Shown: positions 6,771 through 64,000 of the stretch, one piece after another | Numbering within the stretch: the stretch's first letter is position 1 | Layout: every line of letters begins with the position of its first letter | Origin: Octopus bimaculoides | Taxonomy: Eukaryota | Reading direction: 5' to 3' | Assembly: GCF_001194135.2 (NCBI RefSeq) | Contig: NC_068984.1 | Span: 130,474,875-130,538,874 of the forward strand | DNA: 64,000 bases | Position numbers and translations under genes: made by a program | The notes under the pieces: generated by a model | What the model was told of the DNA's origin: nothing | The model's input: the letters and a program-made list of their open reading frames with translations, nothing else | The model's database searches: none

Positions 6771-6884
6771 GCTTTGTATATTAGCAATATGTGAAGTTAA
6801 CTTGAAAAGGTGAGCCTAAATTGTAGCAGGTTTATAATGTGAAGAATGAGAGACTTCAATAGTTTTAATTTCCCAACATATCTA

Positions 6885-7035
6885 CACTCTCTGAGTGGTT
6901 GGCATTAGGAAGGGCATCCAGCTGTAGAAACTCTGCCAAATCAGATTGGAGCCTGGTGTAGCCATCTGGTTTCACCAGTCCTCAGTCAAATCGTCCAACC
7001 CATGCTAGCATGGAAAGCGGACGTTAAACGACAAT
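6885..7035 (+). mobile_element. SINE/LINE 3' module with (GAT)n tail (family 2)
   Basis: GAGTGGTTGGCATTAGGAAGGGCATCCAGCTGTAGAAAC...GGACGTTAAACGA; near-identical copies at 23227, 52040 and 63080. Confidence 0.7.
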
Positions 7036-7376
7036 GATGATATACAGGTGCAGGTGTGACTTCCCAACCATATGGTTCTGAGTTCAGTTCCACTGCAAGG
7101 TACCTTGGGCAAGCATCTTCTATTATATATATAAATTATATATATAAATATCTTTTAAATTAATTTATGGTAACGGTAAAGGCATGCACATAAAGTTCCT
7201 ATTTTATTATGCTGGCTACCATCTAATGATACTGACTAGTGAGTCAGTTTTTTTGGGGTTACATCATAGTTATACCAATATAATGTAGGATAAATATAAT
7301 AATAACAATGATTCTTGCCAGCTCCTGTCGAATCATCTAAGGCATGTTAGCATGGAAGAAGGTCATTAAATGATGA

Positions 7377-22559: not shown

Positions 22560-25500
22560 CTGAGGGCAAGAAAACAAAATCAAGAAAAAAAAAAAGACAA
22601 ACAAATGAAGGAAAAAAAAACCCCAAAAAATATTCCTAGAATGATAGCAAAGCTGAGTTTTCCTTTTTTTTTTTTGAGATGTGGGTGGGGGAATATCTCT
22701 GATGTTTGAACTGGCAAATTACTATGACAACAACAGCAACAAAAACAAAAATAAATAAATAAAAAAAAAAGACCGAACCATACAAAACAGCAAACCGCTA
22801 CCTAAACATGAACCAGCAAGAAAGGGTCAGTCAAATCTTCAACACGCTCCCTAGGGATCTTTAAAATAGGGACCACATTAGGTTAGCAGGAAAGAATCAA
22901 TATATTCAGTTTCTTCCAATCTGTGTAGCAGCCAGATGTTCTTTCAGCAAACTCCTTAGTGACGTTAATATAAAGATTATTAGTTGTCTTTCTGTCTTTT
23001 ACTTGTTTCAGTCATTGGACTGTGACCATGCTGGGGCACTGCCTTGAAGGGTGCCCCAGCATGGTCACAGTTGAACATATCAACCCCCATACATGTTTCG
23101 TACTTATTCTATTGGCCTCTTTTGCTGAGTTGCAAAGTAATGGGGATGCAAACAAACCAACACAAGCACACACACACATGATGGGTTTCCACAGTTTCCA
23201 TCTATCAAATTTAATTAGAAGGAAGAGCACCCACTACACTCTCTGAGTGGTTGGCGGTAGGAAGGGCATCCAGCTGTAGAAACACTGCCAAATCAGATTG
23301 GGGCCTGGTGTAGCCATCTGGTTTCACCAGTCCTCAGTCAAATCGTCCAACCCATGCTAGCATGGAAAGCGGACGTTAAACGACGATGATGATGATGATG
23401 ATGATGATTGACCAGAGGCGATAGCAGAAGACATTTGCTTAAGGTGCCATGCAGTAGTACTGAACCTGAAACCACATGGTTGCACACTCTCACACACACA
23501 CATCATCACCATCACATATATGACATACACTTATAAACACACAAATATACATAAATATAACCCCACCACCCATTCACATACACATTCCAACACACATGCA
23601 CACACATTTGTGTGATAATGTCCCGGAAAAAGACACTTTTTAAAACCCCCTTTTTTGGGGTACAAACTCATCCAAGACGAATCCTGGTTCTGTGATACAA
23701 ACTCCCCGTTTTAAAGTGATGTAAATTATAACTTTACTTCAAAATTTCATGTCAATTTATGTTACAAACAAGAGCTTAATAATGACTAAGTTATTTTAAT
23801 AAAGTCCTCATTATTTCAAAATTAATTGGACATAGACATTTTATTTCCCTGCTCTTTTGTCTTGCAAGTTACATTGCAATTTCACTAGAGCTTATGCCAT
23901 GTAAAAAGCACCTAGTACACTCTGTAAAGTGGTTGGCATTAGAAAGGGCATCCAGCTGTAGAAACCATACCAGAGCTGACATTGGAGCTTGATGTGGGCT
24001 TGCAGCTTGTGGGATGTGAAACCATCCTACTTATGCTAGCATGAAAAGTGGACTTTAAATTATGATGATGATGATGACGACAACAACAAGGAATATTGTT
24101 ACAAAAGGATTGAGGACATGTTCCAAGACCAAAGTTTCTGCAATGAAACACAAATGGCATCTCATCAGGTTGGGCCAAACTGGAAGATTTCACCCCACCC
24201 ACCCAATCAGACCTTGTGAAGTAAGCAAGCCCTGCAGTAGAATCAGAAATCAAAAGAGATGCTTGAAGAGAAACTCTTAGCACTGAGGATGATTGCTGAC
24301 CAAGTGTGCTGGAGAACTTTGCCAATGACCTCATGTGTGGAATGCTTTCATGTGTTGGAAGATAGATTCTAAACCAAATAGTGACAAGTTGCCATCACAT
24401 CAACAATAGACAAAATGAAAGGAGACTATATGTTGGAAGAAAGTCTGGTCAGAAAAGAGGATACATAGACAGAGCAATAAACATACATATATGCATACAG
24501 ATACACATTCATCAGAGACAAACAATCACTTGCAAAGGAGTCTCTATATCAGTGCTCCACAACTGGTATGCCATGGCACACTCGTGCGCAACAAGATAAT
24601 GCTAGGTGTGCCACAGTGTAACCTGAGCATAACTTTTTTCCCAATACTATCAGCTACATTTTTAGTTCAGCTGTGCCACCAAATTTTGAAAAGAATATAA
24701 ATGTACCACAAGTGAAAAAAGGTTGCAGAGCATTGTTCTGTGTCACTATTCAACCTGTTTAGAAATAGAAGCCAACTCTTCCTCAAATAACAGTGCTGTA
24801 TACATTATGTTCTAAAAAACAAACAGACAGGATGGTCATAACTGGAATGTCTTTTACTATTGATCTGCTTGATCAGGATTAACCGGAGAGTTAATCGGAG
24901 AGACTACAAAAACAGGCTGTTTACAAATAAATGGGGAAACTAAATAGACAAGAGAAGTATAGGAATGTTAAAGCATGACCTTTCGGTCAGGTAACAATGG
25001 TCCCAACTAGTGGGTCTAATTGGCACTGTGTTGGTTATGATGACGAGGATTCCAGCTGATTCGATTAACAGAACAGCCTGCTCATAAAATTAACATGCAA
25101 GTAGATGAGTACAGACAACACAGACATGTGTACCCTTAATGTAATTCTCAGGGAGATTCAGTGTGACACAGAATGTGACAAAACTGGCCCTTTGAATTAC
25201 AGACATAATTCATTTTTGCCAGCTGGGTGGACTGGATCAACATGAAATAGAGTGTCTTGCTCAAGGTCACAACATGCCAACAGGAATCAAAATCAGGACT
25301 CTAAGCCAAATACGCTAACCACTAAGCCACACATCTTCACAACTAGTAGGTGGACTTATCCTAGCATACAGGAATGAAAAAAGATGATGATAATGATAAT
25401 ATCAATGATGACTGCTATATTTCAAATCCCAAAGAAGGGAAATATGATGGATTTAATAATTAAGAAACACAGACATAAGTTGATGAGCATTTGCATAGAA

Positions 25501-36640: not shown

Positions 36641-37023
36641 CATACATACACTCATATATGTATAATTATATACATTCATACACTGTATATATTCTGCAAG
36701 AGTGCTGGACGTAGTCAGATGGTTACCGGGGTTAGGGCTTTTCTATGAATAAGGCACACATTACGAACAATGCAGCAGATGTAAAGCCAATCTTGGTAGA
36801 GTGATGGAATGTGAACGAGAGAATGAAGACGACGACGAAGAAATGTTGAAGAACACCAGCAAGAAGAGATGAAGAGGAAGGAGAAAAAAACAAAGGAAAG
36901 AAGGAAGAATGTTTTTAAACAAAAATGAAAAAAAAACAATCAACACAAACAAAAAAAAAACTTCACAAAAACAAAATGCAGGTAGCCAGAGCAATGGTTG
37001 TCTAGACGGACTGCAATCCTTAC

Positions 37024-37317
37024 CTACAGGAACATGCATGGTATTGCGATTCTCAGGACTGGGTGGTTTGAACCGTGGAGGTGGCGGGTCTGAAGGCGTA
37101 CGATAGTGACCCAAGAAAGAGGCATTGGGCTCGGACCAGTTCCTTGTATGGCCAGATGTTGGCGGTGGAACAGGGGCTGGTGGCTTCTTTTTGGGCGGCA
37201 GTGGAGGCAGACTTGGTCCGCCTGCACCGCTGTGATTATAGCTGTAGGAAGTGGTGTGCAGCAAGGTTCCGTTGGTCTGTGAAGGTGCCGCTCCACCGAT
37301 GCTATAGTGATTCAAAC
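37024..37317 (-). CDS. Asap: ASAP large Pro-rich exon (phase 1-1, 294 nt)
   Basis: catcag|GT TTG AAT...GTA G|gtaagg; LNHYSIGGAAPSQ...PSLPPLPPKKKPPAPVPPP...DPPPPRFKPPSPENRNTMHVPV. Confidence 0.9.
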
Positions 37318-38730
37318 CTGATGCAAATAATGCTGATGAGGCAAAATAAACAACATGTCAATACAAGAAACTTGCTTTGAGAGAGCAAATTGAGGAGATA
37401 GAGGAAGCGAGAGAGAGAAAAAGGGGTAAGGCAGGGAGGGAGGGTGGAAGGGAGATAGAGAGTGAAGGAGGGAGGGAGAAAGAAAGTGAGACAGGTAGGG
37501 ACAGAGAAGGAACAATGAAATAAAAAGAGGAGGAGGAGGAGAAAAGAAAGATTGTATAATGAAAGAAAGGGAAGAGAAAAATACATAGGGAAACACACAG
37601 AATATTTACATATGTACCTTAACTTAATTTACATATTTACATCTGTACCTTAACTTAATTTTGCACTGCTGCAGTCATCAGGCAATTTTATTACTTGATG
37701 ACAGTTGCAATGTGAAATGCAGAAAAGCAATCCGTGAAGACACAACTGTAAACATGTATTATTTTCACTTTACCAAGCTGTACAGAGTACTACTTGTGTT
37801 CAGGTGTAAAATAATTGTAAGCACCAAAACAGGATTTTGTCAGGGATTGATGATGGCAGTAAGTGACAAACCATTCAGGTCCCTGGTGGACACATTAAAA
37901 ACTTGTTTTTGTTAGTAACTGAGCTGACTGAGCTTAACCCATTAGATACCCAGTTGTAAACAACCTAACCTTTTACAGATAAACAACATATTGAAATGTC
38001 ATTAACAATTTTGTCTTTGGTGTCTTTTCATTGACAGATCACAGCTAATATAGGTAGTTTTGTCTGGTAACTAGTGAGTGGTCTGGAATGATTCTATTAC
38101 TTAAATGTATACACTAATATAAGCATTTTCACTTACATGTATGTTCCATTTTTTAAAATGGTTACATACAAAACAGACCATTTGAATTATCTGTACAGCT
38201 GAAACCTATGCAATAATAGATGAAGAGTTGACATTATATTGTGTAATAAACACTGTCTATTCTACAACACTACTGAGTTTTCTGTGTTTTTTTTCATGTT
38301 ATCACACACTGATAAACATTACAGTATGTGTGTGTGTGTATACAAGCATAGCTGTGTGGGTAAGAAGCTTGTTTTGCAACCACATGGTTTCAAGTCCAGC
38401 CCCATTGTGTGGCACCTTGAGTAAGTGTCCTCTACTATAGCTTGGACCAACCAATGCTTTGTGAGCAAATTTGGTGGACACAAACTGTGTGGAACTGTTT
38501 TTGTGTATGTGTGTCTTTGTGTTTCTCCCTCACCATTGCTTGACAACCAGCATTCCTTTTTCTTTTTATATCCCTGTAACTTAGCAGTTTGGCATAGAAA
38601 CTGATAGAATAAGTATCAGACCTAAAAAGTAAGTACTGGGGTTGATTTGTTCAATTAAAACCCTTCAAGGCAGTGCCCCAGCATGGCCACAGTACAATGA
38701 CTGAAATAAAAGATGAAAAAGATAAAAGAC

Positions 38731-38771
<41 letters not shown>

Positions 38772-41174
38772 ATCATCATCACCATTTTAGCATCCACTTT
38801 TCTATGTTTGCATGGATCAGATGCAATTTGTTGAAACAGATTTTCTACACCTGGATGGCCTTCCTGTTGCTAACCCTCATTTGGTCCCAAACAAGGTAAT
38901 ATTTCCTCATGGACTACGTTTAACTTAATAGCACCACCTGGAACAGCATTTTAAGGCAGGTGTTAGGACACCATTGCACACTCAAATAGGGAGGTGTTTG
39001 CCAAGGTGTATACAAGTTTTGGTGGTTTATCTGCTATTTCTAGGAGGAATTTGTCCAGGTAACATTCGAATGTCATAGGATCAATCGTGTGTACTCATGC
39101 ATGATGAAGCACACAAAGAAAGAGAAGAAAAATGTTTGAAATGATAAGATGATTTTTGAGAGGCTGTGATAAAAGATATGATGAGAAAAGAGCTTGTAGT
39201 GGATAAGAGAGAGAGGGAGGGAGAGATAGGAGGAGAGAGAAGGAAGGAGAAACAGAGGGAGGGGGAGAGAGAGAGGGAGGGAGAAAGGGATGGTAAAAGA
39301 AGTGAGTGAGAGAAGAGGTCTGTGAAGCAAGTAAAACCTGAAGTTGTAAAGTTGACATTGTGATGAGTATTTTAAGATATTCATTGATGAGTAACTCATA
39401 TTTGTAATGCAGCATTTGAGTAACATATCTGTAACCCATATGAGGCATGTGACTTATTTGTAATATACATGAGTTGTATGGCACATCTGTAACACAAGAG
39501 TCAAGTGGCAGGTCTTTGTTACGACAGCAGTTAAGAGACTGGTTTGTAACATAGGAGTTCTAGTGATGTCCATGCTGGCATGGGTTGGACGGTTTGGCCA
39601 GGGCTGGCCAGCTGGGGAGCTGCACCAGGCTCCAGTCTGATCTGGCAAGGTTTCTACAGCTGGATGCCCTTCCTAATGCCAACCAAAGTTGGGTCTTTTT
39701 ATGTAGCATTGTATGAGAATTTTTACATGGCACCAGTACAAGTGCTTTTTATGTGGAACTGGCACAAAACTCTTGTAGGCCAGTCCTCTTCACCAGGGGA
39801 AGTAGCCTTAACACTTCTGTTATGAAGTACAGGTCTTCTTGAGTACGTTTCAATATTTTGCCACCTCACCTGAAAGGTTCAGTATGCTGATGTCATCCTA
39901 GCACCAGGGACCAAATAAGCTTATGGAAGGTCCAATTTGCATAAAGGACCTGGTCGGAGGATCCTATTCTGTAATAACATTCCACAATACCATGTGCTTC
40001 CTGTCCTCTCTGTGTACCTGCTTCTTGCCACTCTCTTTGTTAACTTGCCTCTTCCTGCCCTCTCTGTCTCTTTTCTATTTACATTCTCCTCTCCCTCCCA
40101 TTCTCTGTGCATTTGCCGCTTCACCTCTCTGCATTTACTTTCACTTTCTCCAAATAACAGTCTCTGCAATTAACAGGGTTTTTCTATATCACTGATAAAG
40201 ATGCTGCAAGAGAGGAATGGGAGAGGGGTGGGGGTGGGGGTGATGAGGGGAAGGGAAACAGAAAAAGAAAAAACTGAAAAATAAGGATTACTTAGAAAAA
40301 CCAAAAAAAAAAAAAAATTCAAATAATGATAATGATAAATAAAAATATATATATATACAAAAATGAAAAAAAAAAAAAAAAAAGAATTTCTAAAAATTCT
40401 GTGCCAACTACTAAAACTGCATTGTTACATTAGTCATATTGTCCTGGTAAATAATGCAGAAATGCACTTGTAAATAGTGTGATGATGCACAAAGAAATAA
40501 CACAGAATCTGTGAATATTTGCAGAAAATCATTTCTAATGACATTTAGTAATGCACGAGGACTACAATAACTACAAGAATGCACCTGAAATCTACAGTAA
40601 TGTATGAGGTGTACATATCAAAATTGCATAGATACATATGTGAAACTTTGTGTTCCTGCAAAACAAAAAAATACTAAGCTATGTACTTGTAAAGTTACAT
40701 AGATTCACATTTATAGCAAACAATGGTGAATTTGATGATATATATGATAATATATNNNNNNNNNNNNNNNNNNNNNNNNNNNNNNNNNNNNNNNNNNNNN
40801 NNNNNNNNNNNNNNNNNNNNNNNNNNNNNNNNNNNNNNNNNNNNNNNNNNNNNNNNNNNNNNNNNNNNNNNNNNNNNNNNNNNNNNNNNNNNNNNNNNNN
40901 NNNNNNNNNNNNNNNNNNNNNNNNNNNNNNNNNNNNNNNNNNNNNNNNNNNNNNNNNNNNNNNNNNNNNNNNNNNNNNNNNNNNNNNNNNGCGTACGAGC
41001 ACTTTGGTCTCTTATATGTATATGTATATATATATACAATAATATAAATAATATATAAATATATGCATATATCCATACATATATGTACATACCTACATCT
41101 ATGGATATATGCATATATTTATATATTATTTCTATTATTATATGATCGAACACCACGCATCCTTTTCCAAGTAA

Positions 41175-41213
<39 letters not shown>

Positions 41214-43628
41214 CTATATATGTGTGTGTGTATGTAGGTATATATATCATCATCATCATCATCGTTTAACATCCGGTATGTGTGTGTGTGTGTATATATA
41301 TATGTGTGTATATATATATATATATATACCTGTATGCAGCACAGCATTGGTAACACCTGCAAAGATCACATATACATAATTGACACTTGCGCATTGCACT
41401 GCACCAATAAACCTTGTAAAACACTGTGGGCGTGAAAAATCAGTTAAATATATCTGCAGCTTATAAGCAATGCACCTGCAGTGTGTTTTTTGGGGTGGGA
41501 GGGTGAGGTAAACGTTCAGGGGTGTCAGGATGGAATTAACAATTAAATAGCTACATGCTTACACAGAACATTAAGACTTTAAACAAATCACACATGCAAA
41601 TGTATGCAGATTTTAAAACAATACAGATCTATTTTATGTTTGATTTTAAATTGGTGCCGACTGATATTATTGATACATCTTGAACTTAGTGTTACACAAA
41701 ATGTGCTGCATTGATGTGGTCAAAATATGTATATATATATATGTGTGTGTGTGTGTGTATGTATGCATGTGTGAGTATGTGTGCAATATATCTAAATGTA
41801 AGTGTTTGAGTTTTTATATGCATGAGAGGTGTAACAGTATTGCTAACAACTTGGGTTTCAAAGGCCCACAACTCTTCAACACCTCTGTCAAAACAACCTC
41901 ACAGATCTGCAAGGTGTAGATGTGGATGTGTTTAAAGAATATTTGGTCAAACTTTCATCTGAAGTGCCAGATGAACTAACTTCATGACAAGAAACACAAA
42001 GACGATCAGTTCTTCCCAATGGTCTACTTCACTAGAAAGAGTTCTGAAGAGTGGACCAAGAAAGGAGTGTGAAATAAAATGCAATCATGCTAAAGGCAGT
42101 GCCCCAGCATGACCACAGCCTGTGGCTGAAATCAGTAAAAGTAATATGAAAGAGTGTAAGTGGTGTGTGTACTTGCATATGCATGTGTGTATTTATGCAC
42201 ATGGTTCTGGGTTCAGTCCCACTGTGTGGCACCTTGGGCAAGTGGCTTCTACTATAGCCTCGGGCCGACCAAAGCCTTGTGAGTGGATTTGGTAGATGGA
42301 AACAGAAAGAAGCCTGTCGTATATATGTATATATATATGTATGTGTGTGTATATGTTTGTGTGTCTGTGTTTGTCCCCCCAACATCGCTTGACAACCGAT
42401 GCTGGTGTGTTTACGTCCCCGTAACTTAGCGGTTCAGCATAAGAGACCTATAGAATAAGTACTAAGCTTACAAAGAATACGTCCTGGGGTCGATTTGCTC
42501 GACTAAAGGCAGTGCTCCAGCATGGCCGCAGTCAAATGACTGAAACAAGTAAAAGAGTAAAAGAGTATATATATATATATATATATNNNNNNNNNNNNNN
42601 NNNNNNNNNNNNNNNNNNNNNNNNNNNNNNNNNNNNNNNNNNNNNNNNNNNNNNNNNNNNNNNNNNNNNNNNNNNNNNNNNNNNNNNNNNNNNNNNNNNN
42701 NNNNNNNNNNNNNNNNNNNNNNNNNNNNNNNNNNNNNNNNNNNNNNNNNNNNNNNNNNNNNNNNNNNNNNNNNNNNNNNNNNNNNNNNNNNNNNNNNNNN
42801 NNNNNNNNNNNNNNNNNNNNNNNNNNNNNNNNNNNATATATATATATATACATACATATAATACAAGCATATAACACTCATATCTAGTACTTGGCGTTTC
42901 CCAGCAACAGCAGATAAGATTTTAGCCAATTTCCAGCTACCGTTTCATCAGTTCTCATGTGCGTCTATTATATGCAAGTGTTCCATCCTTGTATTGTATA
43001 TTCAATTTAGTCCTCTATTTCAATATTGGTGTGTATTTGTTTCATTTTTACACATTGGCTTGTCAATATATATATCATTTTTAAAAAATAAAAAAAATTA
43101 AATACAGGTTCAGTCCCACTGCACAGCACCTTGGGCACATGCCTTCTACTATAGCCTGGGCTGACCAAAACCTTGTAAGTAGATTTAGTAGACAGAAACT
43201 GAAAGAAGCTCATATATATATATATGTTGAAGACACATACTCCTCTCCTTCTGTAACAGTTTCTTTATCCAGTCTATACCTCACTCAGTTGAGGGGTCTT
43301 ATCTTGTGAGAACTTGGCAACCTCACCAGTGCTGGTGCCACATAAAAAGCACCCAGTACACACTGTAAAATGGCATTAGGAAGGGCATCTAGCAGTAGAA
43401 ACTATGCTAAATGAGACATAGAATCTGGCAGAGCCCTCTTGCTTGTCTGTTCTTGTCAAACTGCCCAATCCATGCCAGCATAGAAAAAGGAACGATGATG
43501 ATGATGATATATATGCGATTCCATGACATTCTGTAATACATTGATCTCGCTATATCATAGCACATTTGATAGCTGATATTTGTGGACGAGCTTTGTAAAG
43601 CAAACTGCAAGGTTTATACCTACATTGA

Positions 43629-44737: not shown

Positions 44738-47584
44738 NNNNNNNNNNNNNNNNNNNNNNNNNNNNNNNNNNNNNNNNNNNNNNNNNNNNNNNNNNNNNNN
44801 NNNNNNNNNNNNNNNNNNNNNNNNNNNNNNNNNNNNNNNNNNNNNNNNNNNNNNNNNNNNNNNNNNNNNNNNNNNNNNNNNNNNNNNNNNNNNNNNNNNN
44901 NNNNNNNNNNNNNNNNNNNNNNNNNNNNNNNNNNNNNNNNNNNNNNNNNNNNNNNNNNNNNNNNNNNNNNNNNNNNNNNNNNNNNNNNNNNNNNNNNNNN
45001 NNNNNNNNNNNNNNNNNNNNNNNNNNNNNNNNNNNNNNNNNNNNNNNNNNNNNNNNNNNNNNNNNNNNNNNNNNNNNNNNNNNNNNNNNNNNNNNNNNNN
45101 NNNNNNNNNNNNNNNNNNNNNNNNNNNNNNNNNNNNNNNNNNNNNNNNNNNNNNNNNNNNNNNNNNNNNNNNNNNNNNNNNNNNNNNNNNNNNNNNNNNN
45201 NNNNNNNNNNNNNNNNNNNNNNNNNNNNNNNNNNNNNNNNNNNNNNNNNNNNNNNNNNNNNNNNNNNNNNNNNNNNNNNNNNNNNNNNNNNNNNNNNNNN
45301 NNNNNNNNNNNNNNNNNNNNNNNNNNNNNNNNNNNNNNNNNNNNNNNNNNNNNNNNNNNNNNNNNNNNNNNNNNNNNNNNNNNNNNNNNNNNNNNNNNNN
45401 NNNNNNNNNNNNNNNNNNNNNNNNNNNNNNNNNNNNNNNNNNNNNNNNNNNNNNNNNNNNNNNNNNNNNATATATATATATATATATATACACACACACG
45501 TGTGTCCTGGGTATGATTTTAATCTATGTTCAGTAGGGAGAGCCTGGTTCAGGAGTCCCAGTGTTTCGAGTCATGTGGAAACACCACTTAACCACTGTTT
45601 TTCCTAGCTCAGCGGTGGGTTAGCTAGTATGTTACAGAATTGCCTCCAGAGGAAAGTCGTTCATAGACACCTCAGTCTCATCTAAGAGAGGATAGCTCCA
45701 CACCAATCCTACATCCTGGTAACTACTGGGTTCAGGGCATTCATTGCACCAAATACAAGTTTGAAGGACAAGAGAGTAGGACTAGCTCTGCACAAGCCTA
45801 CTAAAATAAATCCCTACTGTTTTGCAGGGTAATTTATTGAGCATTTAAAAAAGCTAATCTCCTCCAGAAAATCTAGGAGGGACTCTGAAAGAGATATTGT
45901 ACATAATCAATATGTGGCATACCCTGTGGTGCTGTGGTTGCTACAAATGTATTGACTTGTCTTTCCTTTGTGATGTATCCATGAGTGGAAAGGTAGCAAG
46001 TATACTTGGGGCAAGGCACATAACTCTGGAAACAACCCAAGTACAGCAGAGGTGAATTAAGCTACTGTCTCTGCAATACCATTGACCAACAACATAAAAG
46101 ACTGCCCATGGACATGTGCTCAAGCTTGAGTGAACACAAAATATTACCCAATGCAGCATTCCAGCACTTTTATTTAAAATACTATGAGTAAGTGAATAAG
46201 TAATTATTAAGTAAAAGAATTTTAAAGAACTGTCATGTATATCCAGCTTGGTTTCTTGTCACATTTGCATTTTTCTTAGTTTCAATATGTTTCTATTTAG
46301 AAATGTCTAGCCTTCGTTATGTATTATTTGCAATGAAGGGAGAACTTCTCAATGTTGCTTCTAGTGTCACAAGTTCAACAGATATTTTGTAGAAGAAAAT
46401 AATGTTAAAAGTATTTTTAAGGAATTGAGGTAGGTCTAGATAAAGATCTGTGATTAACTCTGTTAAGATATGGAACAGATAATTATTACGTAGGAGAAAG
46501 GAGATTTCTTTGATTGTGTTATTAACATCATTATAAGTTAATTTATCAGTTTATCTGTCTTCTCTCTCTTTCTCTTTCTCTCTCTCTCTCTCACACACAC
46601 ACATGCTGTAACAAGAAAAGATTTCTTGACAAGAGTTTTTTTTCAGTGACATTCCCCATTGCTTGTACCTATTTTTGCAGATTTATAATTAAATGAACTG
46701 AAGTATATAGAATAAAGCATTCTACTGAAGGCATACTAAATACAATTACAAATAAATCACTTGGATAGGACACCAATCTATCACAAGTAACTTTTCCAGA
46801 TGATCTGGTACCTATTTTCTGCAATTATAATTAAATGAACAGAAGCTTGTAGAATAAAGTCTTCTGCTAAAGGTACACTGTGATCAAAAATAAATCTCCT
46901 CTGGGATAGGACAGCAAGCTATTGCAAGTAACTTTCCCAGATGATTTGGGACCAATTCCTCTCATTAAAGCTAGAGAAAATGAAGCAAGTTGACCAGAAT
47001 AGATATACCGTGACAAAGAATCCATCTTTGCTTGGATAAGTTGCTGGTCCACCACATGTAATGAACTAGTAATACCTATTACAGATAGCTTGGCAAACAG
47101 AGGAAATTTAGCATACAGTGTTTTGTATGATGGTATGCTTGTTTATGTAGGAGCTGGTGTGGCTGTGTGGTTGAGAAGCATGCTTCTCAACCAAGTGATT
47201 TTGGGTTCAGTCCCACTGCACAGCACCTTGGGTAAGTGTTTTTTTCTACTATAGCCTGAAATCGACCAAAGGCTTGTGAGTGTAGTTAGTAGGTGGAAAC
47301 TGAAAGAAGCCCATCATATATATATGTAATGTATTTGTGTTTATGCTTACCCTTGTCTAGAAATCATGTGATGGTCATAAATGAGCATCATCATCATCAT
47401 CAATGTAAAACATGTTTGGTCATGTTTGGAAATAGGTGAGAGTTGGTCCCAGGAAGGGCATCTGGCCATAGAAAAGTCTGCCTCAACAAATTTTGTCTGA
47501 CCCATGCAAACAATGAAAAGCAGATGTTAAATGATGATGATGTATCTCCATACCACTTCAATCCCTACCCTTTGGGATTCTTCA

Positions 47585-47765: not shown

Positions 47766-49172
47766 CCCTATACTTGGTAACATGGCCTGCTTGAAATAGC
47801 AGCCAAATCCCACTCAAACTACACCCTCATATTTTAAAAAAACAGAAGGACAAAATATAGGATCTGTCCTATGAACTGTCTCTTTTCTCCACATTTGGGG
47901 TACTTCTGCTAATGTTCAAAATTGCTATTGCTAGCATCAGCATCAACATCATTGTTATTAAATTTAGCACTGAGTTACATTTCAGGCTATAACTCCAGTT
48001 GGTCACTAAGTCTTATTTCATTGTGGTTAGAACCTCTCCTTATGTGCATATATACACATGCATACACACACACACACACTCATGTGACTATGTATTCATA
48101 AATGCACACACACACACACTAACATGCTTATATTATACAGGTCTGTTTTACTAGATTTTAAGTTTGCTTGATCAAGGGAGAGCTATTTCTAAACAACAAT
48201 ATCAACTTCAAAAGATTTGATTATTATTAATCCTAATTAAAATTGTTCTTCTACACGTCTTAGTAAAGATCCCCTTTGGTCATGAATGACCATAGGACTG
48301 CACCTAAAAAGTTCCCTACCAAGGCACAAATCCAAGCAAGGTTGTTCATGTAAGACCAACAACTGCCCATGCATATCAGTTTCTCCTTTCTATGCCACCA
48401 ATGTTATCCAAGGGAAAGGCAAAGGCTGATACAACTTGGCATGAGTGACGCCGCAACTCGTTTCTACAGCTGAGTGAACTGGAGCAATGTTAAAATAAAG
48501 TGTGTTGCTTAAGAATACAACTCATGGCCTGGTCCAGGAATCAAGCTATCTCATGATTGTGAACCTGATACTCTAACCACTGAGCCATACGCTTACACCA
48601 CTTATGCCTTTAAAATGTATGAAGGGACAATCACAAATCCAATAGCTTAAATATATCTTCAAGAAAAACCTTTTTTTCATCAAAGGTTTTAAACTGTCCC
48701 CAGAGAATGTAACAGAAAATCCCTGGATGTGTAACCCCTTCAATGGGACTGTAATGATACTGTAACAGCAAGCTATGTCCAACATAAAATCTGTTGACAG
48801 TAGGTAGGAGGAAAGGCACCCCAGGTAACGCTTTTATCAGGATGGCACTTTGGAGGTCTGCTGTATAAACCTATATAGGTTTAGGGGACCCAGGGGTGGG
48901 GGTGGGGGTGGGTGACAAACCCAAGGGTTGCACTGAGTGGCACACACTCCAGTTACACCAATGTCAGTTGATTTCAAATATTGCTTTGTTGTCAAGAGAA
49001 GAAACCAGGTTAATTATTAGTGTTGGTGAACGAAGGAGTAGCACCATGATGAGAATTGGAAGAAATAACAGTCGGATGTTGGCAGTAAGAGTGGCAGCAG
49101 CTTCACTGTGCTGAGCCTCATGCAAGTTGCTTGCACACTTACCTGACTTCAGTTTGCTACGGGATAGATAGG

Positions 49173-51543: not shown

Positions 51544-53029
51544 CTATAGTAGAAACGGTAAAAACATCAACAAGGTGTAACGGGTATGGGACGTTCTGGC
51601 ATGCCTGTTTTGGCGTTGCCTATTCGGCATCACTGATTTGATGCTGACTTATTTGACATAAGACATTTAATGTTTCTCTTCTTGTTCCCTTCCTTCCCCC
51701 TTACACACAAACACACACTCTATATATGTGTGTGAATATATCTTCTCTTTAAATTTGACGACTGGCACCCATGCCAACGTCGTCTCCTTCATTGGAAACG
51801 AAACTTGGCTTGCAAAGATCTATTGGGGCAAGCGAAAGCAAAATCATGATGGCACCTGTGCCCAGCATCACCTTCCTGGCACTTGTGCCAGATGGCACAT
51901 GTAAAGATATTCNNNNNNNNNNTGAAATTGTTGCCAGTGCCCCTGGACTGGCTCTTGTGCGGGTGGCACATAAAATACACCATTTTGAGCGTGGCCGTTG
52001 CCAGTACCGCCTGACTGGCATATGTGCCGGTGGCACATAAAAGCACCCACTACACTCTCGGAGTGGTTGGCATTAGGAAGGGCATCCAGCTGTAGAAACT
52101 CTGCCAAATCAGATTGGAGCCTAACCCTAACCCTAACCCTAACCCATGCTAACATGGAAAGCGGACGTTAAACGATGATGATGATGTGTCTGCATAGGGG
52201 CACTCTTCTACATTATTTTGCACTTATTCCTAAGGTTAGATAAATTGGGACAATGTCAGTTTCAACAATGATGGTTCCAGTTGATTCAATCAACAAAATA
52301 ACTGGCACGATTGACATGTCAAAGGTTTATCAATGAACCAATCAACATTACAAGATTAGCCCTTCAGCATTTAAACTGGCCATATCTGGCCTAAATATTC
52401 TACTTGTTTAATCCTAAAACTAGACAGATTTGGCTTCTCACACCTACCTTACAATGTTACTCCAAAGATTAAACCCTCCCAATATCGAAACCTCAAGGCT
52501 ACAAGACCTTGCATGATCCATTCAAAACAATGTAAATAAATAAGCATTACACTTGACAAAGAAATCTGAATGCTAAAGGGTAAAAGAAAAATGAACCAAG
52601 AAAAATATCTCAGAATGGCCAATGGCATATATTTGAACATCATAAACAAAAACAGCTATGTCTAATAGTGTACAACATTATTTCTTGATGTATTGAGATT
52701 GTCTCTAAGGGATGTATCTCTATTATCAAATGGCATCTAAGACCAGCTCCATTTAAAAACTTGAATCTAGATGCCAAACTTTAAAATCCTTTCAGAGCCC
52801 ACGACACATATTTACATATCTAATATCTCCACATATGTATGCTCAATATTGATACATGTTGTTTTATAGACACAACTTTTATACAAACAATAACAAGGGG
52901 GGTTATATACAGATTGTCACAACAGGTAGGGTCAGCCACCAAAGATATATTGGCATTCACAACATATAAAAATACACACACACACAATAGATAGTCACCT
53001 CAGATAAATGAAATAGAAATGTTACTTAC

Positions 53030-55925: not shown

Positions 55926-56559
55926 TAGAATGATCAGTGAGGTGTTGTATCTTTTACTTGATTCAGTCACTAGACAATGGATGTGCTGAGGCACCACCAT
56001 GAAGGGTTAGGGTTTTAATTTAGCAAATCGACCCCAGTACTTATTTTTTAAAGTTTGGTATTTGTTATATTGGTCTTTTTTTGCCAAACTGCTAAGTTAG
56101 AGGAACGTAAACAAAGCAACACCAGTTGCATACTTATTCATTTATTTATATATTTATTGTTGTTTATTACAAAGTTCTATTCAGTAGTAATCATGCATAG
56201 TACCATTTCATTCTTTTTTTGAAATCATCAGCATGACATAACCTGAGGGATATTAATCTAACATTTTATGAAGTGAGACATTCCTTATAGATGGAAAATA
56301 ATTAAGAATCAGATATCAATAAGAAATGTGTTTCTTTATTTTCAGGTAGTGATCCTTGAGGTCAATTTATGTTATGCAATTTATTTCAGGTAACATTGTG
56401 TTACACACCTAGAATTTCTAAATTTACTACATAAGCCACTTACTGTAACAGTGTTTTACATACTCTTTTTTGTCTTGAGCCCTAGAACTCACGGGGCTGA
56501 TTATCCAGTTTCCATAGTGAATATGTGATCAAGATCACAACATTCCCTTGAATAAGAGT

Positions 56560-57160: not shown

Positions 57161-57379
57161 CGTTTTATACACACGGGCATCATTTACTATATATATTTAC
57201 TATATATATTTACTATATATATTACATCATTGGACATGCTACACAAGCCACTCCCTCTAACAGTATTGCTTTGTTACATCATTAGGTTTGCTACACAAAA
57301 TATATCCCATAAAGGAGTGTCGCACACCCCGTGAAATTTATAAGAAAGATAGAAAGGAAATGCTGTGGTGATGACTGAC

Positions 57380-57566
57380 CAGTTCAGCACAAAGTTGGTG
57401 GTTATTTTCAATGGCAATGTCTAGAGGAGCTTGGCCTGCATTGTTCTCGAGTGAAGCCATGTCTGGTTTGGTACGCAGTATCAACTTTATACATTCAGAT
57501 TTGTTGAGTTGAGCACATAAATGGAGAGCTGTGTTGCCATCTTTGGTTCGTTTATCCAGACTAGAA
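57380..57566 (-). CDS. Asap: ASAP ankyrin-repeat exon (phase 2-0, 187 nt)
   Basis: aattgcag|T TCT AGT CTG...GAA CTG|gtcagt; SSLDKRTKDGNTALHLCAQLNKSECIKLILRTKPDMASLENNAGQAPLDIAIENNHQLCAEL (GNTALH and GQAPLDIA ankyrin motifs). Confidence 0.95.
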
Positions 57567-58333
57567 CTGCAATTAGAATGAAACCATGTCAGCCTTGTCA
57601 TATAACTCAATTAAAACACTCAAACACAGATGTTGTCGTCATCATCATCATCATCACTATCAACCCCAGCACATTACCGTCTTAGGTCCTATGACTCATT
57701 AGGCCACACACACACATACATACAAGAATATAAGAAACGAATAACAGCATAACCAAAACAAAATACCCTTGTTTAAAACTGACTAATGACAAATCAATGA
57801 AAGAGCCCCAATGTGTTAGCTCAGCTTGCTAGAAATACAAGCTAAATCTTCCTTAAATCTGAATAATGTAGTCTGAGACGTACACATGACAAAAAAAAAA
57901 AAAATGAGATGGTCATGACACGACCAAAATATTTAAAGAATATTAGAGATTGACCAGTTCAGATATTGTAAATGTAAAATTGGGAGTTTTACCCATACAA
58001 ATGTTATAGATACGAAGTAGGGTTTTGGTGAGTTGAGATGTTCTCGATATACAACCAGGAGTGTTTTACCATGTCTACATTATATAAATATCTAAATATT
58101 GTAAATAGAAACATGGAAACTGATTAGTTGGAAAACTGTAGGTATATAAATCAAAGACTGACAAGAGCAGTTGTACATATAGAATTAGGAATATGATTAT
58201 TTCCACAGAGTAAAATATATATTAGAGAGATTAATCAGTGCAAATGTTGCTCATATAAAACTAGGAGATTTATCTTCTAGGTATTGTGCATGTGTACCTC
58301 TCTCTCTGTCTGTCTATATATATATATATATAT

Positions 58334-59023
58334 NNNNNNNNNNNNNNNNNNNNNNNNNNNNNNNNNNNNNNNNNNNNNNNNNNNNNNNNNNNNNNNNNNN
58401 NNNNNNNNNNNNNNNNNNNNNNNNNNNNNNNNNNNNNNNNNNNNNNNNNNNNNNNNNNNNNNNNNNNNNNNNNNNNNNNNNNNNNNNNNNNNNNNNNNNN
58501 NNNNNNNNNNNNNNNNNNNNNNNNNNNNNNNNNNNNNNNNNNNNNNNNNNNNNNNNNNNNNNNNNNNNNNNNNNNNNNNNNNNNNNNNNNNNNNNNNNNN
58601 NNNNNNNNNNNNNNNNNNNNNNNNNNNNNNNNNNNNNNNNNNNNNNNNNNNNNNNNNNNNNNNNNNNNNNNNNNNNNNNNNNNNNNNNNNNNNNNNNNNN
58701 NNNNNNNNNNNNNNNNNNNNNNNNNNNNNNNNNNNNNNNNNNNNNNNNNNNNNNNNNNNNNNNNNNNNNNNNNNNNNNNNNNNNNNNNNNNNNNNNNNNN
58801 NNNNNNNNNNNNNNNNNNNNNNNNNNNNNNNNNNNNNNNNNNNNNNNNNNNNNNNNNNNNNNNNNNNNNNNNNNNNNNNNNNNNNNNNNNNNNNNNNNNN
58901 NNNNNNNNNNNNNNNNNNNNNNNNNNNNNNNNNNNNNNNNNNNNNNNNNNNNNNNNNNNNNNNNNNNNNNNNNNNNNNNNNNNNNNNNNNNNNNNNNNNN
59001 NNNNNNNNNNNNNNNNNNNNNNN
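58334..59023. other. Assembly gap (N-run); candidate location of the missing ankyrin exon
   Basis: Run of N. Other gaps: 7633-7978, 26245-26765, 40756-40990, 42587-42835, 44738-45469, 51913-51922, 59953-60591. Confidence 0.95.
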
Positions 59024-59275: not shown

Positions 59276-59649
59276 TCACTGCCTGGAAACGAACTCAGAA
59301 TCTTGGGGTTAGTAGCCCGCACTCTTAACCACTATGCCATATGCCATATGTAGTATAATACAGGCTGGTGGTTCTCAACCATTTTCACATCCCTTGGATT
59401 ACTATTTTATTCTAGTGAACCCCATAGCCATTTGATTTTCAAAAACTAGTTTTATAAACACACCTTTCAAAGTTCCTATTTTGTTTTTCACATGTTTACA
59501 TCTATCTTTCACTTATTTCCCCTCATTCCATTTGTGTTATTTCACCTGTCAGTATATACGCATACAAGCTACTAGCACAGGTACTATACACACATACACA
59601 ACCATACATCCTGCACCAACCAAGTACACATCAGTTGCCACACACAAAC

Positions 59650-59952
59650 TGGCTCTTGTGCGGGTGACACATGAAATGTTTCGAGCGGGCTCGATGCCAG
59701 TGCCCCTGGGCCGGCTTGCGGGTGACACATGAAATCTTTCGAGCGAGATCGTTGCCGGTGCCCCTGGGCCGGCTTGCGGGTGACACATGAGGTTTTTCGA
59801 GCGAGGTCGTTGCCGGTGCCCCCGGGCTGGCTTGTGTGCGGGCGACACATGGGGTCTTTCGAGCGGGATCGTTGCCAGTGCCCCTGGACTGGCTCTTGTG
59901 TGGGTGACACATGAAATCTTTCGAGCGGGATCGTTGCCAGTGCCCCTGGACT
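59650..59952. repeat. CpG-rich 58-62-bp minisatellite (at least 5 units, runs into gap)
   Basis: Units GGC(TC)TTG(T)GCGGGTGACACATGAAATCTTTCGAGCGGGATCGTTGCCAGTGCCCCTGGACT; a related sequence precedes the SINE at 51930-52050. Confidence 0.85.
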
Positions 59953-60979
59953 NNNNNNNNNNNNNNNNNNNNNNNNNNNNNNNNNNNNNNNNNNNNNNNN
60001 NNNNNNNNNNNNNNNNNNNNNNNNNNNNNNNNNNNNNNNNNNNNNNNNNNNNNNNNNNNNNNNNNNNNNNNNNNNNNNNNNNNNNNNNNNNNNNNNNNNN
60101 NNNNNNNNNNNNNNNNNNNNNNNNNNNNNNNNNNNNNNNNNNNNNNNNNNNNNNNNNNNNNNNNNNNNNNNNNNNNNNNNNNNNNNNNNNNNNNNNNNNN
60201 NNNNNNNNNNNNNNNNNNNNNNNNNNNNNNNNNNNNNNNNNNNNNNNNNNNNNNNNNNNNNNNNNNNNNNNNNNNNNNNNNNNNNNNNNNNNNNNNNNNN
60301 NNNNNNNNNNNNNNNNNNNNNNNNNNNNNNNNNNNNNNNNNNNNNNNNNNNNNNNNNNNNNNNNNNNNNNNNNNNNNNNNNNNNNNNNNNNNNNNNNNNN
60401 NNNNNNNNNNNNNNNNNNNNNNNNNNNNNNNNNNNNNNNNNNNNNNNNNNNNNNNNNNNNNNNNNNNNNNNNNNNNNNNNNNNNNNNNNNNNNNNNNNNN
60501 NNNNNNNNNNNNNNNNNNNNNNNNNNNNNNNNNNNNNNNNNNNNNNNNNNNNNNNNNNNNNNNNNNNNNNNNNNNNNNNNNNNNNNNNNNNTCTACTATA
60601 GCCTTGGGCCGACCAAAGCCTTGTGAGTGGATTTGGTAGACGGAAACTAAAAGAAGCCCGTCGTATAAATGTATATATATATATATGTATGTGTGTGTAT
60701 ATGTTTGTGTGTCTGTGTTTGTCCCCCCAACATCGCTTGACAACCGGTGCTGGTGTGTTTACGTACCCGTAACTTAGCGGTTCGGCAAAAGAGACCGACA
60801 GAATAAGTACTAGGCTTACAAAGAATACGTCCTGGGGTCGATTTCTTCGACTAAAGGCGGTGCTCCAGCATGGCCGCAGTCCAATGACTGAAACAAGTAA
60901 AGAGAGTAAAAGAGAGTAAAGAGTTCTGGATACAATTAAGAAATACATGATTGCCATGATTGGAATGTCTTTGATCACA

Positions 60980-61070
60980 GGTCTGCTAGATTAAGTTAAT
61001 CCTAGGTCTGCTGGATTAAGGTAATCCTAGGTCTGCTGCATTAAGGTAATCATAGGTCTGCTGGATTAAG
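60980..61070. repeat. 25-bp tandem repeat, about 3.6 copies
   Basis: GTCTGCT(A/G)(G/C)ATTAAG(G/T)TAATC(C/A)TAG repeated. Confidence 0.8.
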
Positions 61071-61134
61071 GCCACCCAACAACAACAGCATACACACACA
61101 CATACACACATTTTATATATATACATATACTTAC

Positions 61135-61315
61135 TGTATTTGGCAGGGTCGTCATCAGCTCCAATCCCTCAGCATGTACCTGCAGCAGTGCAAACACGTC
61201 CTTTGATGCAATTGCTTGTTGCAGTTCCTGTTTCAAGTCTTCCTTGTCTGTGCATGTCTGGATCACATATTTGTGCTGTTCATATTTCGCCTTGATAAAC
61301 TCTCGACGTTTGTTC
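61135..61315 (-). CDS. Asap: ASAP ArfGAP C-terminus / pre-ANK exon (phase 2-0, 181 nt)
   Basis: tttgaccag|G AAC AAA CGT...AAT ACA|gtaagt; NKRREFIKAKYEQHKYVIQTCTDKEDLKQELQQAIASKDVFALLQVHAEGLELMTTLPNT (RxxFIxAKY and LLQVxAEG motifs). Confidence 0.95.
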
Positions 61316-62266
61316 CTGGTCAAAGAAGCAACAACACAAAAATAAACTGTCAAGAATTTTTCTGAGATGAAGGGGTTTGTTAAACTAATTTAAGACTCAG
61401 AAACAATGATCATCATCATCATCATCACCAACACCAGGCCTTGTGTCTACAATAGGTTTCTTTCTGCTATAAGCACAAGATCTGAAATTTTGGTGGTGAG
61501 TGGGGGATAGTTGGTTATATTGACTACATCAACCTCAGTATTCAACTGGTACCTATTTTATCGAGCTACAAAAGATGAAAGGTAAAGTGGAACTCAGCAG
61601 AATTTGAATTCAGAATGTAAAGACGGACGAAATGCCAGCAAGCATTTTGTCTGGTGTCTGGTGTCCTTGCGATTCAACCAACTTACTGCCTTATCTTGTA
61701 GATTTGAGATTTTGATGAAACTACAGTTACTTTTTAGAATAATGATGTAGGGTTGGTGTGTGAGGCCAAATCTGGCCATGAACATAGAGCTGGTAGAATA
61801 GTTTTGAGCTGGATATGGCCAGTTTAAATACTAAAGGGCTAAACATGCTAATGATTCCAGCAGCTCTAAGACTAATAATAATAACACAACACCACAAGTA
61901 ATTTTGAGGGGAGGAGTTCAGTCAGTTACATCAACCATGGAACATGATTGTTTTAATTGTGGATGCTGGGGAGATAAATAGTGATGACTGCTTCTAAGAC
62001 AGGCATAAGGCCTAAAAACTTGGTGAGGGGGAGTCAGTTGATTCAATTGACTCCTAATACTTTATGTTACTGACCTAAAAGATGAAAGGCAAAATTGACC
62101 TGCGAGGATTTCTTTCCTGTTCATAACATTCTATTGGTGTTGACTTACAAAGGCTCGAGAAAAACATTAATGGCATCAATCTCACTGGTCTTGGAGGGCC
62201 TGTATAGACCATAGACACTGCACCTTTCTTGGGACCCAGCAAGTAGAAACAAAAAGATATGTAGCA

Positions 62267-63079: not shown

Positions 63080-63255
63080 GGCACGTAAAAGCACCCACTA
63101 CACTCTCGGAGTGGGTGGCGTTAGGAAGGGCATCCAGCTGTAGAAACTCTGCCAAATCAGATTGGAGCCTGGTGTAGCCATCTGGTTCACCAGTTCTCAG
63201 TCAAATCGTCCAACCCATGCTAGCATGGAAAGCGGACGTTAAATGATGATGATGA
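63080..63255 (+). mobile_element. SINE/LINE 3' module with (GAT)n tail (family 2)
   Basis: Intact copy of the family, usable as the reference for the telomere-substituted copy at 52040-52185. Confidence 0.75.
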
Positions 63256-63552: not shown

Positions 63553-63885
63553 TGTGTGTGTGTGTGTGTGTGTGTGTGTGCTTGTATCTTGTGTTTGTTC
63601 CCCACTGCACCTCTTTACAACCAATGTTGATTTGTTTATGTTCCTGTAATGAAGCAGTTTGACCAAAAGGACTGATAAAATAATTATGAGACTTTTAAAA
63701 AACAGAACATAAGCACTGGGGACAATTTGTTTAACAAACTAAAACCCTTTCAAGCAGTACCCCAACAAGGGGTGCCACCCAATGACCAAAACAAATAAAA
63801 GAAGATACAGGAAAATGCCATAGCTTGCTATAACCAATAACTTGAGGTACCTGAGAGAAATACGTGACAGCAAAGAGGTACATAC

Positions 63886-64000
63886 CAGCAGCTGGGATGT
63901 ACCAAGTTCATCTATGACAATACTTTGTGTCCTACTGATGTGGACACCAACCTCACGATGAATACCACAGCACTCCAGACAGATCAAGATACCCAAGTTG
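63886..64000 (-). CDS. Asap: ASAP ArfGAP zinc-finger exon (5'-partial, ends phase 0)
   Basis: [38 protein letters not shown]|gtatgt, closely matching ASAP1 [38 protein letters not shown] (second CxxC and catalytic Arg). Confidence 0.95.

What the first reader, a model, noticed from the sequence alone, without database searches (positions are those of the whole stretch)
52120..52145. Telomeric hexamers replacing the middle of a SINE: footprint of telomerase-type break repair
Seen: intact copies (6940-7030, 23290-23370) read GATTGGAGCCT-[42 nt]-AACCCATGCT, whereas this copy reads GATTGGAGCCT-(AACCCT)3-AACCCATGCT. A 42-bp deletion is filled by exactly three telomeric units, in register with microhomology on both sides (the minus-strand break end is ...GGGTT, a natural telomerase primer). 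Established: TTAGGG is the molluscan telomere repeat, and in-register short interstitial telomeric insertions are attributed to telomerase acting at double-strand breaks, described mainly in mammals. The multi-copy host gives the ancestral state for free.
Basis: partly seen in the sequence, partly recalled or inferred. Interest (0 to 1): 0.7.

Follow-up and report, generated by a model that had tools for sequence, protein, structure and literature searches.

The report
Telomere repeats patched into a SINE
One copy of a short interspersed repeat, sitting in an intron of an ArfGAP gene, has 42 internal bases replaced by three perfect telomere units that run in phase with both flanks; this scar is known from vertebrates, where it is attributed to telomerase helping to mend a broken chromosome, and here it appears in what looks like a mollusc genome.

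Summary
Window 52112-52150 reads GATTGGAGCCT-(AACCCT)3-AACCCATGCT. The perfect telomeric tract covers 52120-52145 (26 nt, 4.33 units). It is the longest perfect hexamer array in the window and is not expected by chance. All seven other copies of the element in the window keep the 41-42 nt middle block.

The tract is in phase with 3 nt of the element on the left (CCT) and 5 nt on the right (AACCC). A homology-independent insertion would give this about 4 times in 100,000. A multi-step history (a 42-bp deletion, then slippage from an 8-nt seed) is unlikely, so the block was probably replaced in one step by annealing-primed synthesis of telomeric repeats at a break. This matches the "short interstitial telomeric sequence with flank deletion" class described in primates and rodents.

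Telomerase itself is inferred by analogy, not shown. A repair polymerase copying telomeric DNA or RNA would leave the same scar.

The two decisive tests could not be run, because no related genome was reachable:
- Is the variant unique, or shared by a subfamily?
- What does the orthologous locus look like?

Verdict: a real feature, a new member of a known kind, of modest interest.

The parts
52120..52145 (-). Perfect telomeric tract: (CCTAAC)4CC on the + strand, GGG(TTAGGG)3TTAGG on the - strand; 26 nt, 4.33 units, with four GGG runs on the - strand. The G-rich strand is the sense strand of the host gene.
   Evidence: 1 match, 0.00 expected; longest perfect hexamer array in the window.
52123..52140 (.). 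The 18 nt with no counterpart in other copies, (AACCCT)3. They replace the 42-nt block found in intact copies, a net loss of 24 bp.
   Evidence: Alignment A1.
52120..52122 (.). Left junction: CCT belongs to the element consensus (GAGCCT) and is also in phase with the telomeric tract. Inferred annealing site for the AGG-3' end of the extended minus strand.
   Evidence: simulation.
52141..52145 (.). Right junction: AACCC belongs to the element consensus (CCAACCCATGC) and is also in phase with the tract. On the minus strand it reads GGGTT-3', the inferred primer end.
   Evidence: simulation; it is the only AACCC in the element consensus.
52044..52186 (+). Body of the host element (SINE-like retroposon, + orientation, antisense to the host gene), ending in a (GAT)4 tail at 52174-52185. 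It has one private difference from the close copies in the body (A at 52152 versus G).
51923..52043 (+). 5' part of the host element: two units of about 67 bp (GTTGCCAGT..GGTGGCACATAAAA) in tandem. It starts at a 10-N assembly gap (51913-51922).
   Evidence: (internal self-hits 51930-51975 / 51997-42).
6882..7041 (+). Intact reference copy; the 42-nt block is at 6955-6996.
23230..23408 (+). Intact reference copy with a (GAT)8 tail; the 42-nt block is at 23307-23348.
63094..63255 (+). Intact reference copy (block of 41 nt, with a 1-nt deletion). It shares the CGG variant with the host copy.

Best explanation
A double-strand break fell inside a genomic copy of the SINE-like element, either this copy or a direct progenitor, somewhere within the 42-nt block.

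Inferred sequence of events:
1. End processing removed the block.
2. This exposed a minus-strand 3' end, ...GCATGGGTT-3'. Its last five bases pair with the template of a TTAGGG-making telomerase.
3. Telomerase extended that end by about three and a half units: (AGGGTT)3AGG.
4. The new AGG-3' annealed to the CCT-3' end of the other side (...GATTGGAGCCT-3').
5. Fill-in and ligation by microhomology-mediated end joining sealed the break.

The result is a 42-bp loss and an 18-bp gain, giving a perfect 26-nt interstitial telomeric tract.

Shown: the replacement, its perfection, its phase with both flanks, and its absence from 7 of 7 other copies in the window.
Inferred: the break, the order of steps, and the enzyme.

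No function is implied. It is a neutral repair scar in an intron, although it places a four-GGG-run motif on the sense strand of the host gene.
For: Sequence and uniqueness in the window:
- Searches show the replacement against 7 other copies.
- One search shows the 26-nt tract is not expected by chance.
- Searches show it is the longest perfect hexamer array in the window.

Junctions:
- if a telomeric tract of random phase and orientation were inserted between random end points in the element consensus, at least 3 nt in phase on one side and at least 5 nt on the other would occur in 3.65e-5 of 2,000,000 trials. Both junctions therefore point to annealing.

One step rather than several:
- The tract has no mismatch.
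- The host copy has one private substitution in its roughly 120 remaining body positions, so it is young.
- The end points of the 42-bp deletion share no microhomology with each other (read).

Match to the published class (PMC2246262):
- ITSs of at least 4 units were inserted in one step at break sites.
- Flanks were deleted at 50-52% of loci.
- The repeat-element consensus was used to give the ancestral state.

Other support:
- Insertion of telomeric sequence at breaks needs telomerase activity in human cells (PMC5388398).
- TTAGGG is the only experimentally determined cephalopod telomere motif (PMC13218726).
Against: - Nothing in the sequence identifies the enzyme. There is no telomerase-RNA-derived flank, which is the direct evidence in rodents.
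- The ancestral state comes from paralogous copies, not from the orthologous locus.
- With 7 comparison copies, a subfamily carrying the same replacement cannot be excluded. The upper 95% bound on its frequency among copies is about 35%.
- The organism is not identified from the window, so its telomere motif is assumed.
- The region comes from a gapped draft assembly, and a gap lies 198 bp away.
- It is a single locus, so enrichment statistics of the kind used for mammals are not possible.
Confidence: 0.5

Rival explanations
1. The same break-repair event, but synthesis was done by a repair polymerase rather than telomerase. For example, polymerase theta-type end joining with a templated insertion. 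Either the ...GGGTT-3' end annealed to C-rich telomeric single-stranded DNA, or the ...GAGCCT-3' end annealed to G-rich telomeric DNA or UUAGGG-repeat RNA. The end was extended by a few units, then released and annealed to the other end.
For: Microhomology is present at both junctions. An 18-nt filler is within the size range usual for templated insertions in alternative end joining (general knowledge). The product is symmetrical, so either strand could have been the extended one. PMC2246262 itself lists capture of telomeric fragments as the alternative.
Against: In human cells, telomeric insertion at breaks was abolished without telomerase activity (PMC5388398). The longer microhomology (5 nt) is on the G-strand primer side, as expected for telomerase. 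No telomeric template lies nearby in cis: the only other telomere-like run in the window is 12 nt, 3.9 kb away.
Confidence: 0.17
2. The replacement is inherited, not local. It arose once in a source copy of the element, by whatever mechanism, and the copy at 52044-52186 is one of several retroposed descendants, so it is a subfamily trait.
For: The host copy is very close to the young-copy consensus and has a normal (GAT)n tail, so it could be a recent retroposition product. Only 8 copies could be inspected. No external copies were reachable.
Against: None of the 7 other copies in the window carries it. This rival changes where the event happened, not what kind of event it was.
Confidence: 0.2
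3. Deletion first, slippage later. A simple 42-bp deletion joined GAGCCT to AACCCATGC and by chance created CCTAACCC. Replication slippage then expanded this hexamer to 4.33 units.
For: That deletion does create an 8-nt telomere-like seed. A single-unit gain of a telomere-like hexamer, AGGGTT to AGGGTTAGGGTT, is seen in a copy of another repeat family at 56003-56014 and is most simply a tandem duplication.
Against: Only 15 of 11,450 possible deletions of 100 bp or less in the element create such a seed. A 1.33-unit seed repeats only 2 nt, far below what slippage usually needs. Three unit gains would be required in a copy that has acquired one private point change. The tract is the longest perfect hexamer array in the window. 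PMC2246262 concludes that ITS birth is distinct from microsatellite birth.
Confidence: 0.05
4. Artefact of sequencing or assembly: a chimeric read, or a wrong path through the repeat graph in a gapped short-read draft.
For: The window has 8 N runs. The contig that carries the tract begins only 198 bp upstream, inside the repeated 5' part of the element.
Against: A wrong path can attach an element copy to the wrong flank, but it cannot create two seamless, in-phase junctions through 3- and 5-nt overlaps. So an element with this replacement should exist somewhere in the genome even if it is misplaced. Chimeric reads would not be expected to rejoin the same element 42 nt further on in the same orientation.
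Confidence: 0.05
5. Template switching during retroposition. The reverse transcriptase copying the element's RNA left it at ...GGGTT-3', copied a CCCUAA-repeat RNA for three units, and returned to the same RNA 42 nt upstream.
For: It would also give a single copy with microhomology at both switches. The element is mobilised by a reverse transcriptase, as shown by 5'-truncated copies and a microsatellite tail.
Against: It needs two switches, with a return to the same template close to the departure point, and an abundant C-rich telomeric RNA, for which there is no evidence here.
Confidence: 0.03

Closest known systems
Short interstitial telomeric sequences inserted at double-strand breaks in primates and rodents (Nergadze et al. 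2004, 2007; PMC2246262), later extended to horse and human polymorphisms (PMC7215372) and, for the telomerase-RNA-flanked subtype, to 22 of 30 vertebrates (PMC8537989)
   Same: A perfect array of at least 4 telomeric hexamers at an internal site, flanked by unrelated sequence. It appears in one step relative to the ancestral sequence, with flanking bases deleted (the commonest class, about 50% of loci). [quoted passage not shown] It lies inside a repetitive element whose consensus gives the ancestral state.
   Different: The host appears to be a lophotrochozoan, probably a mollusc, not a vertebrate. The ancestral state comes only from paralogous copies, with no orthologous empty locus. The tract is at the lower size limit of the class (4.33 units). 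There is no telomerase-RNA-derived flank. It is a single locus without genome-wide statistics.
De novo telomere addition (chromosome healing, neotelomere formation) by telomerase at breaks
   Same: The same inferred first step: telomerase primes on a 3' end with a few nucleotides of complementarity to its template (cited in PMC2246262; 10.1101/2022.10.31.514589, listed).
   Different: Here the extended end was rejoined to the other side of the break after about three units. The chromosome stayed intact and the repeats became interstitial.
Templated insertions in polymerase theta-mediated (alternative) end joining
   Same: A deletion plus a short filler, with microhomology at both junctions. 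The filler length of 18 nt is typical.
   Different: Such fillers are normally copied from sequence close to the break. Here the filler is pure telomeric repeat and no template lies nearby.
Hexanucleotide microsatellite born by slippage
   Same: A tandem array of a 6-nt unit.
   Different: No array exists in the ancestral sequence. The gain coincides with a 42-nt loss. The unit is the telomere motif, 1 of 350 hexamer classes. The tract is perfect, and it is the longest hexamer array in the window.

Membership tests
Short interstitial telomeric sequence (ITS) of the break-repair type | At least four tandem telomeric hexamers with fewer than one mismatch per unit, at an internal site (search criterion of PMC2246262) | tested here: met
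   26 nt perfect, 4.33 units, at 52120-52145. Three units are net new and 8 nt are shared with the flanks. Criterion quoted.
Short interstitial telomeric sequence (ITS) of the break-repair type | Flanked on both sides by unrelated, non-telomeric sequence; not a head-to-head fusion array and not a subtelomeric degenerate array | tested here: met
   Both flanks are the two halves of one SINE-like element in one orientation. There is no other telomeric array in 64 kb apart from a 12-mer.
Short interstitial telomeric sequence (ITS) of the break-repair type | Present in one step relative to an ancestral sequence that lacks it (an orthologous empty locus, or a repeat-element consensus) | tested here: inconclusive
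   The repeat-consensus version is met: 7 of 7 other copies keep the 41-42 nt block and none has telomeric units. The orthologous-locus version could not be tested, because no related genome was reachable. Intermediate states cannot be excluded.
Short interstitial telomeric sequence (ITS) of the break-repair type | [quoted passage not shown] | tested here: met
   5 nt (GGGTT-3' on the minus strand) and 3 nt (CCT-3' on the plus strand). The joint chance is 3.65e-5 under homology-independent insertion.
Short interstitial telomeric sequence (ITS) of the break-repair type | The repeat unit is the telomere repeat of the organism | not testable with these tools
   The organism is not given. The host-gene exons are closest to a gastropod protein (59% identity) and a bryozoan protein. 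TTAGGG is the only experimentally determined cephalopod motif. No chromosome end lies in the window.
Short interstitial telomeric sequence (ITS) of the break-repair type | Synthesis by telomerase | not testable with these tools
   This needs genetics or a telomerase-RNA-derived flank. The junctions here are seamless, with no extra bases.
TERC-ITS (telomeric repeats flanked by retrotranscribed telomerase RNA) | Non-template telomerase-RNA sequence adjacent to the repeats | tested here: not met
   Both flanks continue directly as element consensus, so there is no room for an extra fragment. Not filed under this subtype.
Microsatellite born by slippage | A proto-array of at least about two units in the ancestral sequence, with gain of units and no other change | tested here: not met
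   Intact copies carry only AACCC and CCT, 42 nt apart. The gain coincides with a 42-nt loss.
SINE (the host element) | Short, dispersed, multi-copy, with 5'-truncated copies and a simple-repeat 3' tail | tested here: met
   8 copies in 64 kb, with variable 5' ends and (GAT)n tails.
SINE (the host element) | Polymerase III promoter or small-RNA-derived head | tested here: inconclusive
   ARAGORN finds no tRNA-like gene in the window. The 5' part consists of tandem units of about 60-67 bp. Rfam was not searched.

The most novel reading that the evidence does not exclude
Telomerase, or a telomere-templated polymerase, takes part in germline double-strand-break repair in molluscs, leaving the same in-register short telomeric insertions as in vertebrates. 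If so, the pathway would be ancient in animals. Abundant young SINE families would also give a way, without any outgroup, to count such events genome-wide in species that lack close relatives with sequenced genomes.
Probability: 0.4. Interest if true: 0.45.

Novelty: new member of a known kind. Interest (0 to 1): 0.33.

Why it matters
Sequence-level evidence that telomeric repeats are used to patch chromosome breaks comes from vertebrates (PMC2246262, PMC7215372, PMC8537989). My searches of the available literature found only cytogenetic mentions of interstitial telomeric signals in molluscs.

One clean locus in a probable cephalopod shows the same signature: flank deletion, perfect units, and an in-phase primer end. 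This makes the question testable, because a genome-wide screen of this very abundant element family could show whether the signature is enriched. On its own it is a single neutral scar in an intron with no functional consequence shown, so its value is as a lead and as a method, not as a discovery.

Tried and rejected
1. Fetching more copies or the orthologous locus failed.
- A protein search with the 57-aa reading frame across the tract gave no hit.
- A 24-nt invariant core of the element is absent from the viral, prokaryote-genome and metagenome collections.
- A 16-nt core gave 120 metagenome loci, none of which contains the element.
- A search with the host-gene exons returned no protein above 62% identity, so no locus from the same or a sister species was available.

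2. A literature search for the element by sequence string found nothing.

3. A hairpin in the deleted block as a cause of breakage was rejected. A CTGGTG/CACCAG stem is predicted, but the energy is not unusual (z = -1.36; 18 of 200 shuffles fold as well) and the deletion end points do not coincide with it.

4. Point-mutation drift of the old block into telomeric repeats was rejected. At least 8 of 18 positions would have had to change in a copy with one private substitution elsewhere.

5. Two independent element fragments flanking an older telomeric array was rejected. This would need a 3'-truncated fragment, which target-primed reverse transcription does not produce, lying collinear and in the same orientation with only 42 nt missing.

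6. The other perfect arrays of at least 15 nt, for example (GGGGTG)3 at 40225 and 48893, lie in single-copy sequence, so their ancestral state is unknown.

7. Enrichment of telomeric arrays in the window is not significant. 2 of 47 period-6 arrays belong to the telomeric class, against about 0.13 expected for one class in 350. Once the first array, which prompted the analysis, is set aside, the second is not significant.

Full report
**What is there**

Window 52112-52150 reads GATTGGAGCCT (52112-52122), AACCCTAACCCTAACCCT (52123-52140), AACCCATGCT (52141-50). The block is at 6955-6996 and 23307-23348.

The last three bases of the left flank (CCT) and the first five of the right flank (AACCC) continue the hexamer phase. 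The perfect telomeric run is therefore 26 nt, 52120-52145, or 4.33 units.

How unusual this is:
- It occurs once in the window. None is expected in 100 dinucleotide-preserving shuffles, even with three mismatches allowed.
- Among 47 perfect period-6 arrays of at least 12 nt it is the longest, at 26 nt against 20 nt for the next.

**The host element**

A blastn search of the window with the element found 8 copies. Alignment A1 shows that three close copies (6882, 23230, 63094) and four diverged copies (23916, 39685 reverse, 43371, 50267) all keep the 41-42 nt middle block. Only the copy at 52044-52186 lacks it.

The copies have variable 5' ends and (GAT)n tails, as expected for a retroposed short interspersed element. 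No tRNA-like head was detected.

The host copy carries two tandem 5' units of about 67 bp (51923-52043) and starts at a 10-N assembly gap (51913-51922). Outside the replaced block it has a single private difference from the close copies in the body (A at 52152), so it is a young copy.

**Genomic setting**

The minus strand of the window carries exons with the following domains:
- ArfGap at 63739-63996
- ankyrin at 57338-57610
- SH3 at 1377-1661
- a proline-rich exon at about 36761-37315

This is an ArfGAP-ankyrin-SH3 gene. The tract lies in one of its introns. The element is antisense to the gene, so the G-rich strand of the tract is on the sense strand.

The best named relatives of these exons are a gastropod protein (59% identity) and a bryozoan protein. 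This fits a lophotrochozoan. From memory, the element and the style of the assembly look like an octopus genome, but I could not verify that.

**One step or several**

The new 18 nt cannot be derived from the old block by point changes. At least 8 of 18 positions would have to change in a copy that is otherwise almost identical to its relatives.

A deletion followed by slippage is possible in principle, because joining GAGCCT to AACCCATGC creates CCTAACCC. Several points weigh against it:
- Only 15 of 11,450 deletions of 100 bp or less in the element create a telomeric seed of 8-9 nt.
- Such a seed repeats only 2 nt.
- Three unit gains would be needed.
- The end points of the deletion share no microhomology with each other.
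- The authors of the mammalian work likewise concluded that these arrays do not arise as microsatellites do (PMC2246262).

**The junctions**

I simulated homology-independent insertion: a telomeric tract of random phase, orientation and length placed between random end points in the element consensus. At least 3 nt in phase on one side and at least 5 nt on the other occurred in 3.65e-5 of 2,000,000 trials. Both junctions therefore look like annealing products.

On the minus strand the right-hand end reads ...GCATGGGTT-3', which is a suitable telomerase primer. The left-hand end, ...GAGCCT-3', can pair with an AGG-3' terminus of the extended strand.

**Comparison with what is known**

The mammalian short interstitial telomeric sequences were defined as at least four units with fewer than one mismatch per unit. 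Their reported traits (PMC2246262) are:
- inserted in one step at break sites
- flank deletion at 50-52% of loci
- ancestral state read from a repeat consensus when the array lies inside a repeat

The locus here meets each sequence criterion that I could test. In human cells, insertion of telomeric sequence at breaks requires telomerase activity (PMC5388398). TTAGGG is the only experimentally determined cephalopod telomere motif (PMC13218726).

The telomerase-RNA-flanked subtype (PMC8537989) does not apply, because the junctions are seamless.

**What is not shown**

- The enzyme. A repair polymerase that copies telomeric DNA or telomeric RNA after annealing would give the same product.
- The place of the event. 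Only 8 copies could be examined, so a subfamily that inherited the replacement from a source copy is not excluded. This would move the event but would not explain it away.
- The orthologous or allelic state.
- The support from reads in a gapped draft. A wrong assembly path could misplace the element copy, but it could hardly create two in-phase junctions.

All attempts to reach other sequence from this or a related genome failed.

**Verdict**

That is a short interstitial telomeric sequence of the type known from vertebrates, with telomerase the most likely but unproven agent.

It is a new member of a known kind. Its interest is modest and lies mainly in extending the signature to a probable mollusc, and in the idea of using abundant young repeats as a built-in ancestral reference.

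Noticed in passing
window 56003-56014: AGGGTTAGGGTT sits inside a copy of a different repeat family. The other copies (38565-38732, 42393-42507, 60741-60844, 63625-63748, 22995-23166) read GAAGGGTTTTA there, so this copy has gained exactly one telomere-like hexamer in phase (alignment A2). A plain 6-bp tandem duplication is enough to explain it. It is the only other telomeric run of at least 12 nt in the window.
   Followed up: partly
window 1377-1661, 36761-37315, 57338-57610, 61066-61353, 63739-63996 (minus strand): Exons of an ArfGAP-ankyrin-SH3 (ASAP-type) gene. Pfam confirms the ArfGap, Ank and SH3 domains. The best named relatives are a gastropod protein (59%) and a bryozoan protein (39%). 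The whole window lies within this gene and consists mostly of introns.
   Followed up: partly
window 59640-59952: At least five tandem units of about 60 bp (GTTGCCAGTGCCCCTGG..GGGTGACACATGAAATCTTTCGAGCG..) related to the 5' part of the host element. The array runs into a 639-N gap, so the 5' module of the element also occurs as a minisatellite-like array.
   Followed up: no
window 7633-7978, 26245-26765, 40756-40990, 42587-42835, 44738-45469, 51913-51922, 58334-59023, 59953-60591: Eight N runs (3,422 N in total), several of them bordered by dinucleotide repeats such as (TA)n and (GA)n. This marks the window as a scaffolded short-read draft.
   Followed up: no
window 40225-40242 and 48893-48912: Two perfect (GGGGTG)3 arrays in otherwise unrelated single-copy sequence. 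These are the only other perfect hexamer arrays of three units.
   Followed up: partly
window 7041-7110 and 23440-23480: Fragments of another short repeat with a box-B-like GGTTCTGAGTTCAGT motif lie directly beside the 3' tails of two copies of the host element.
   Followed up: no
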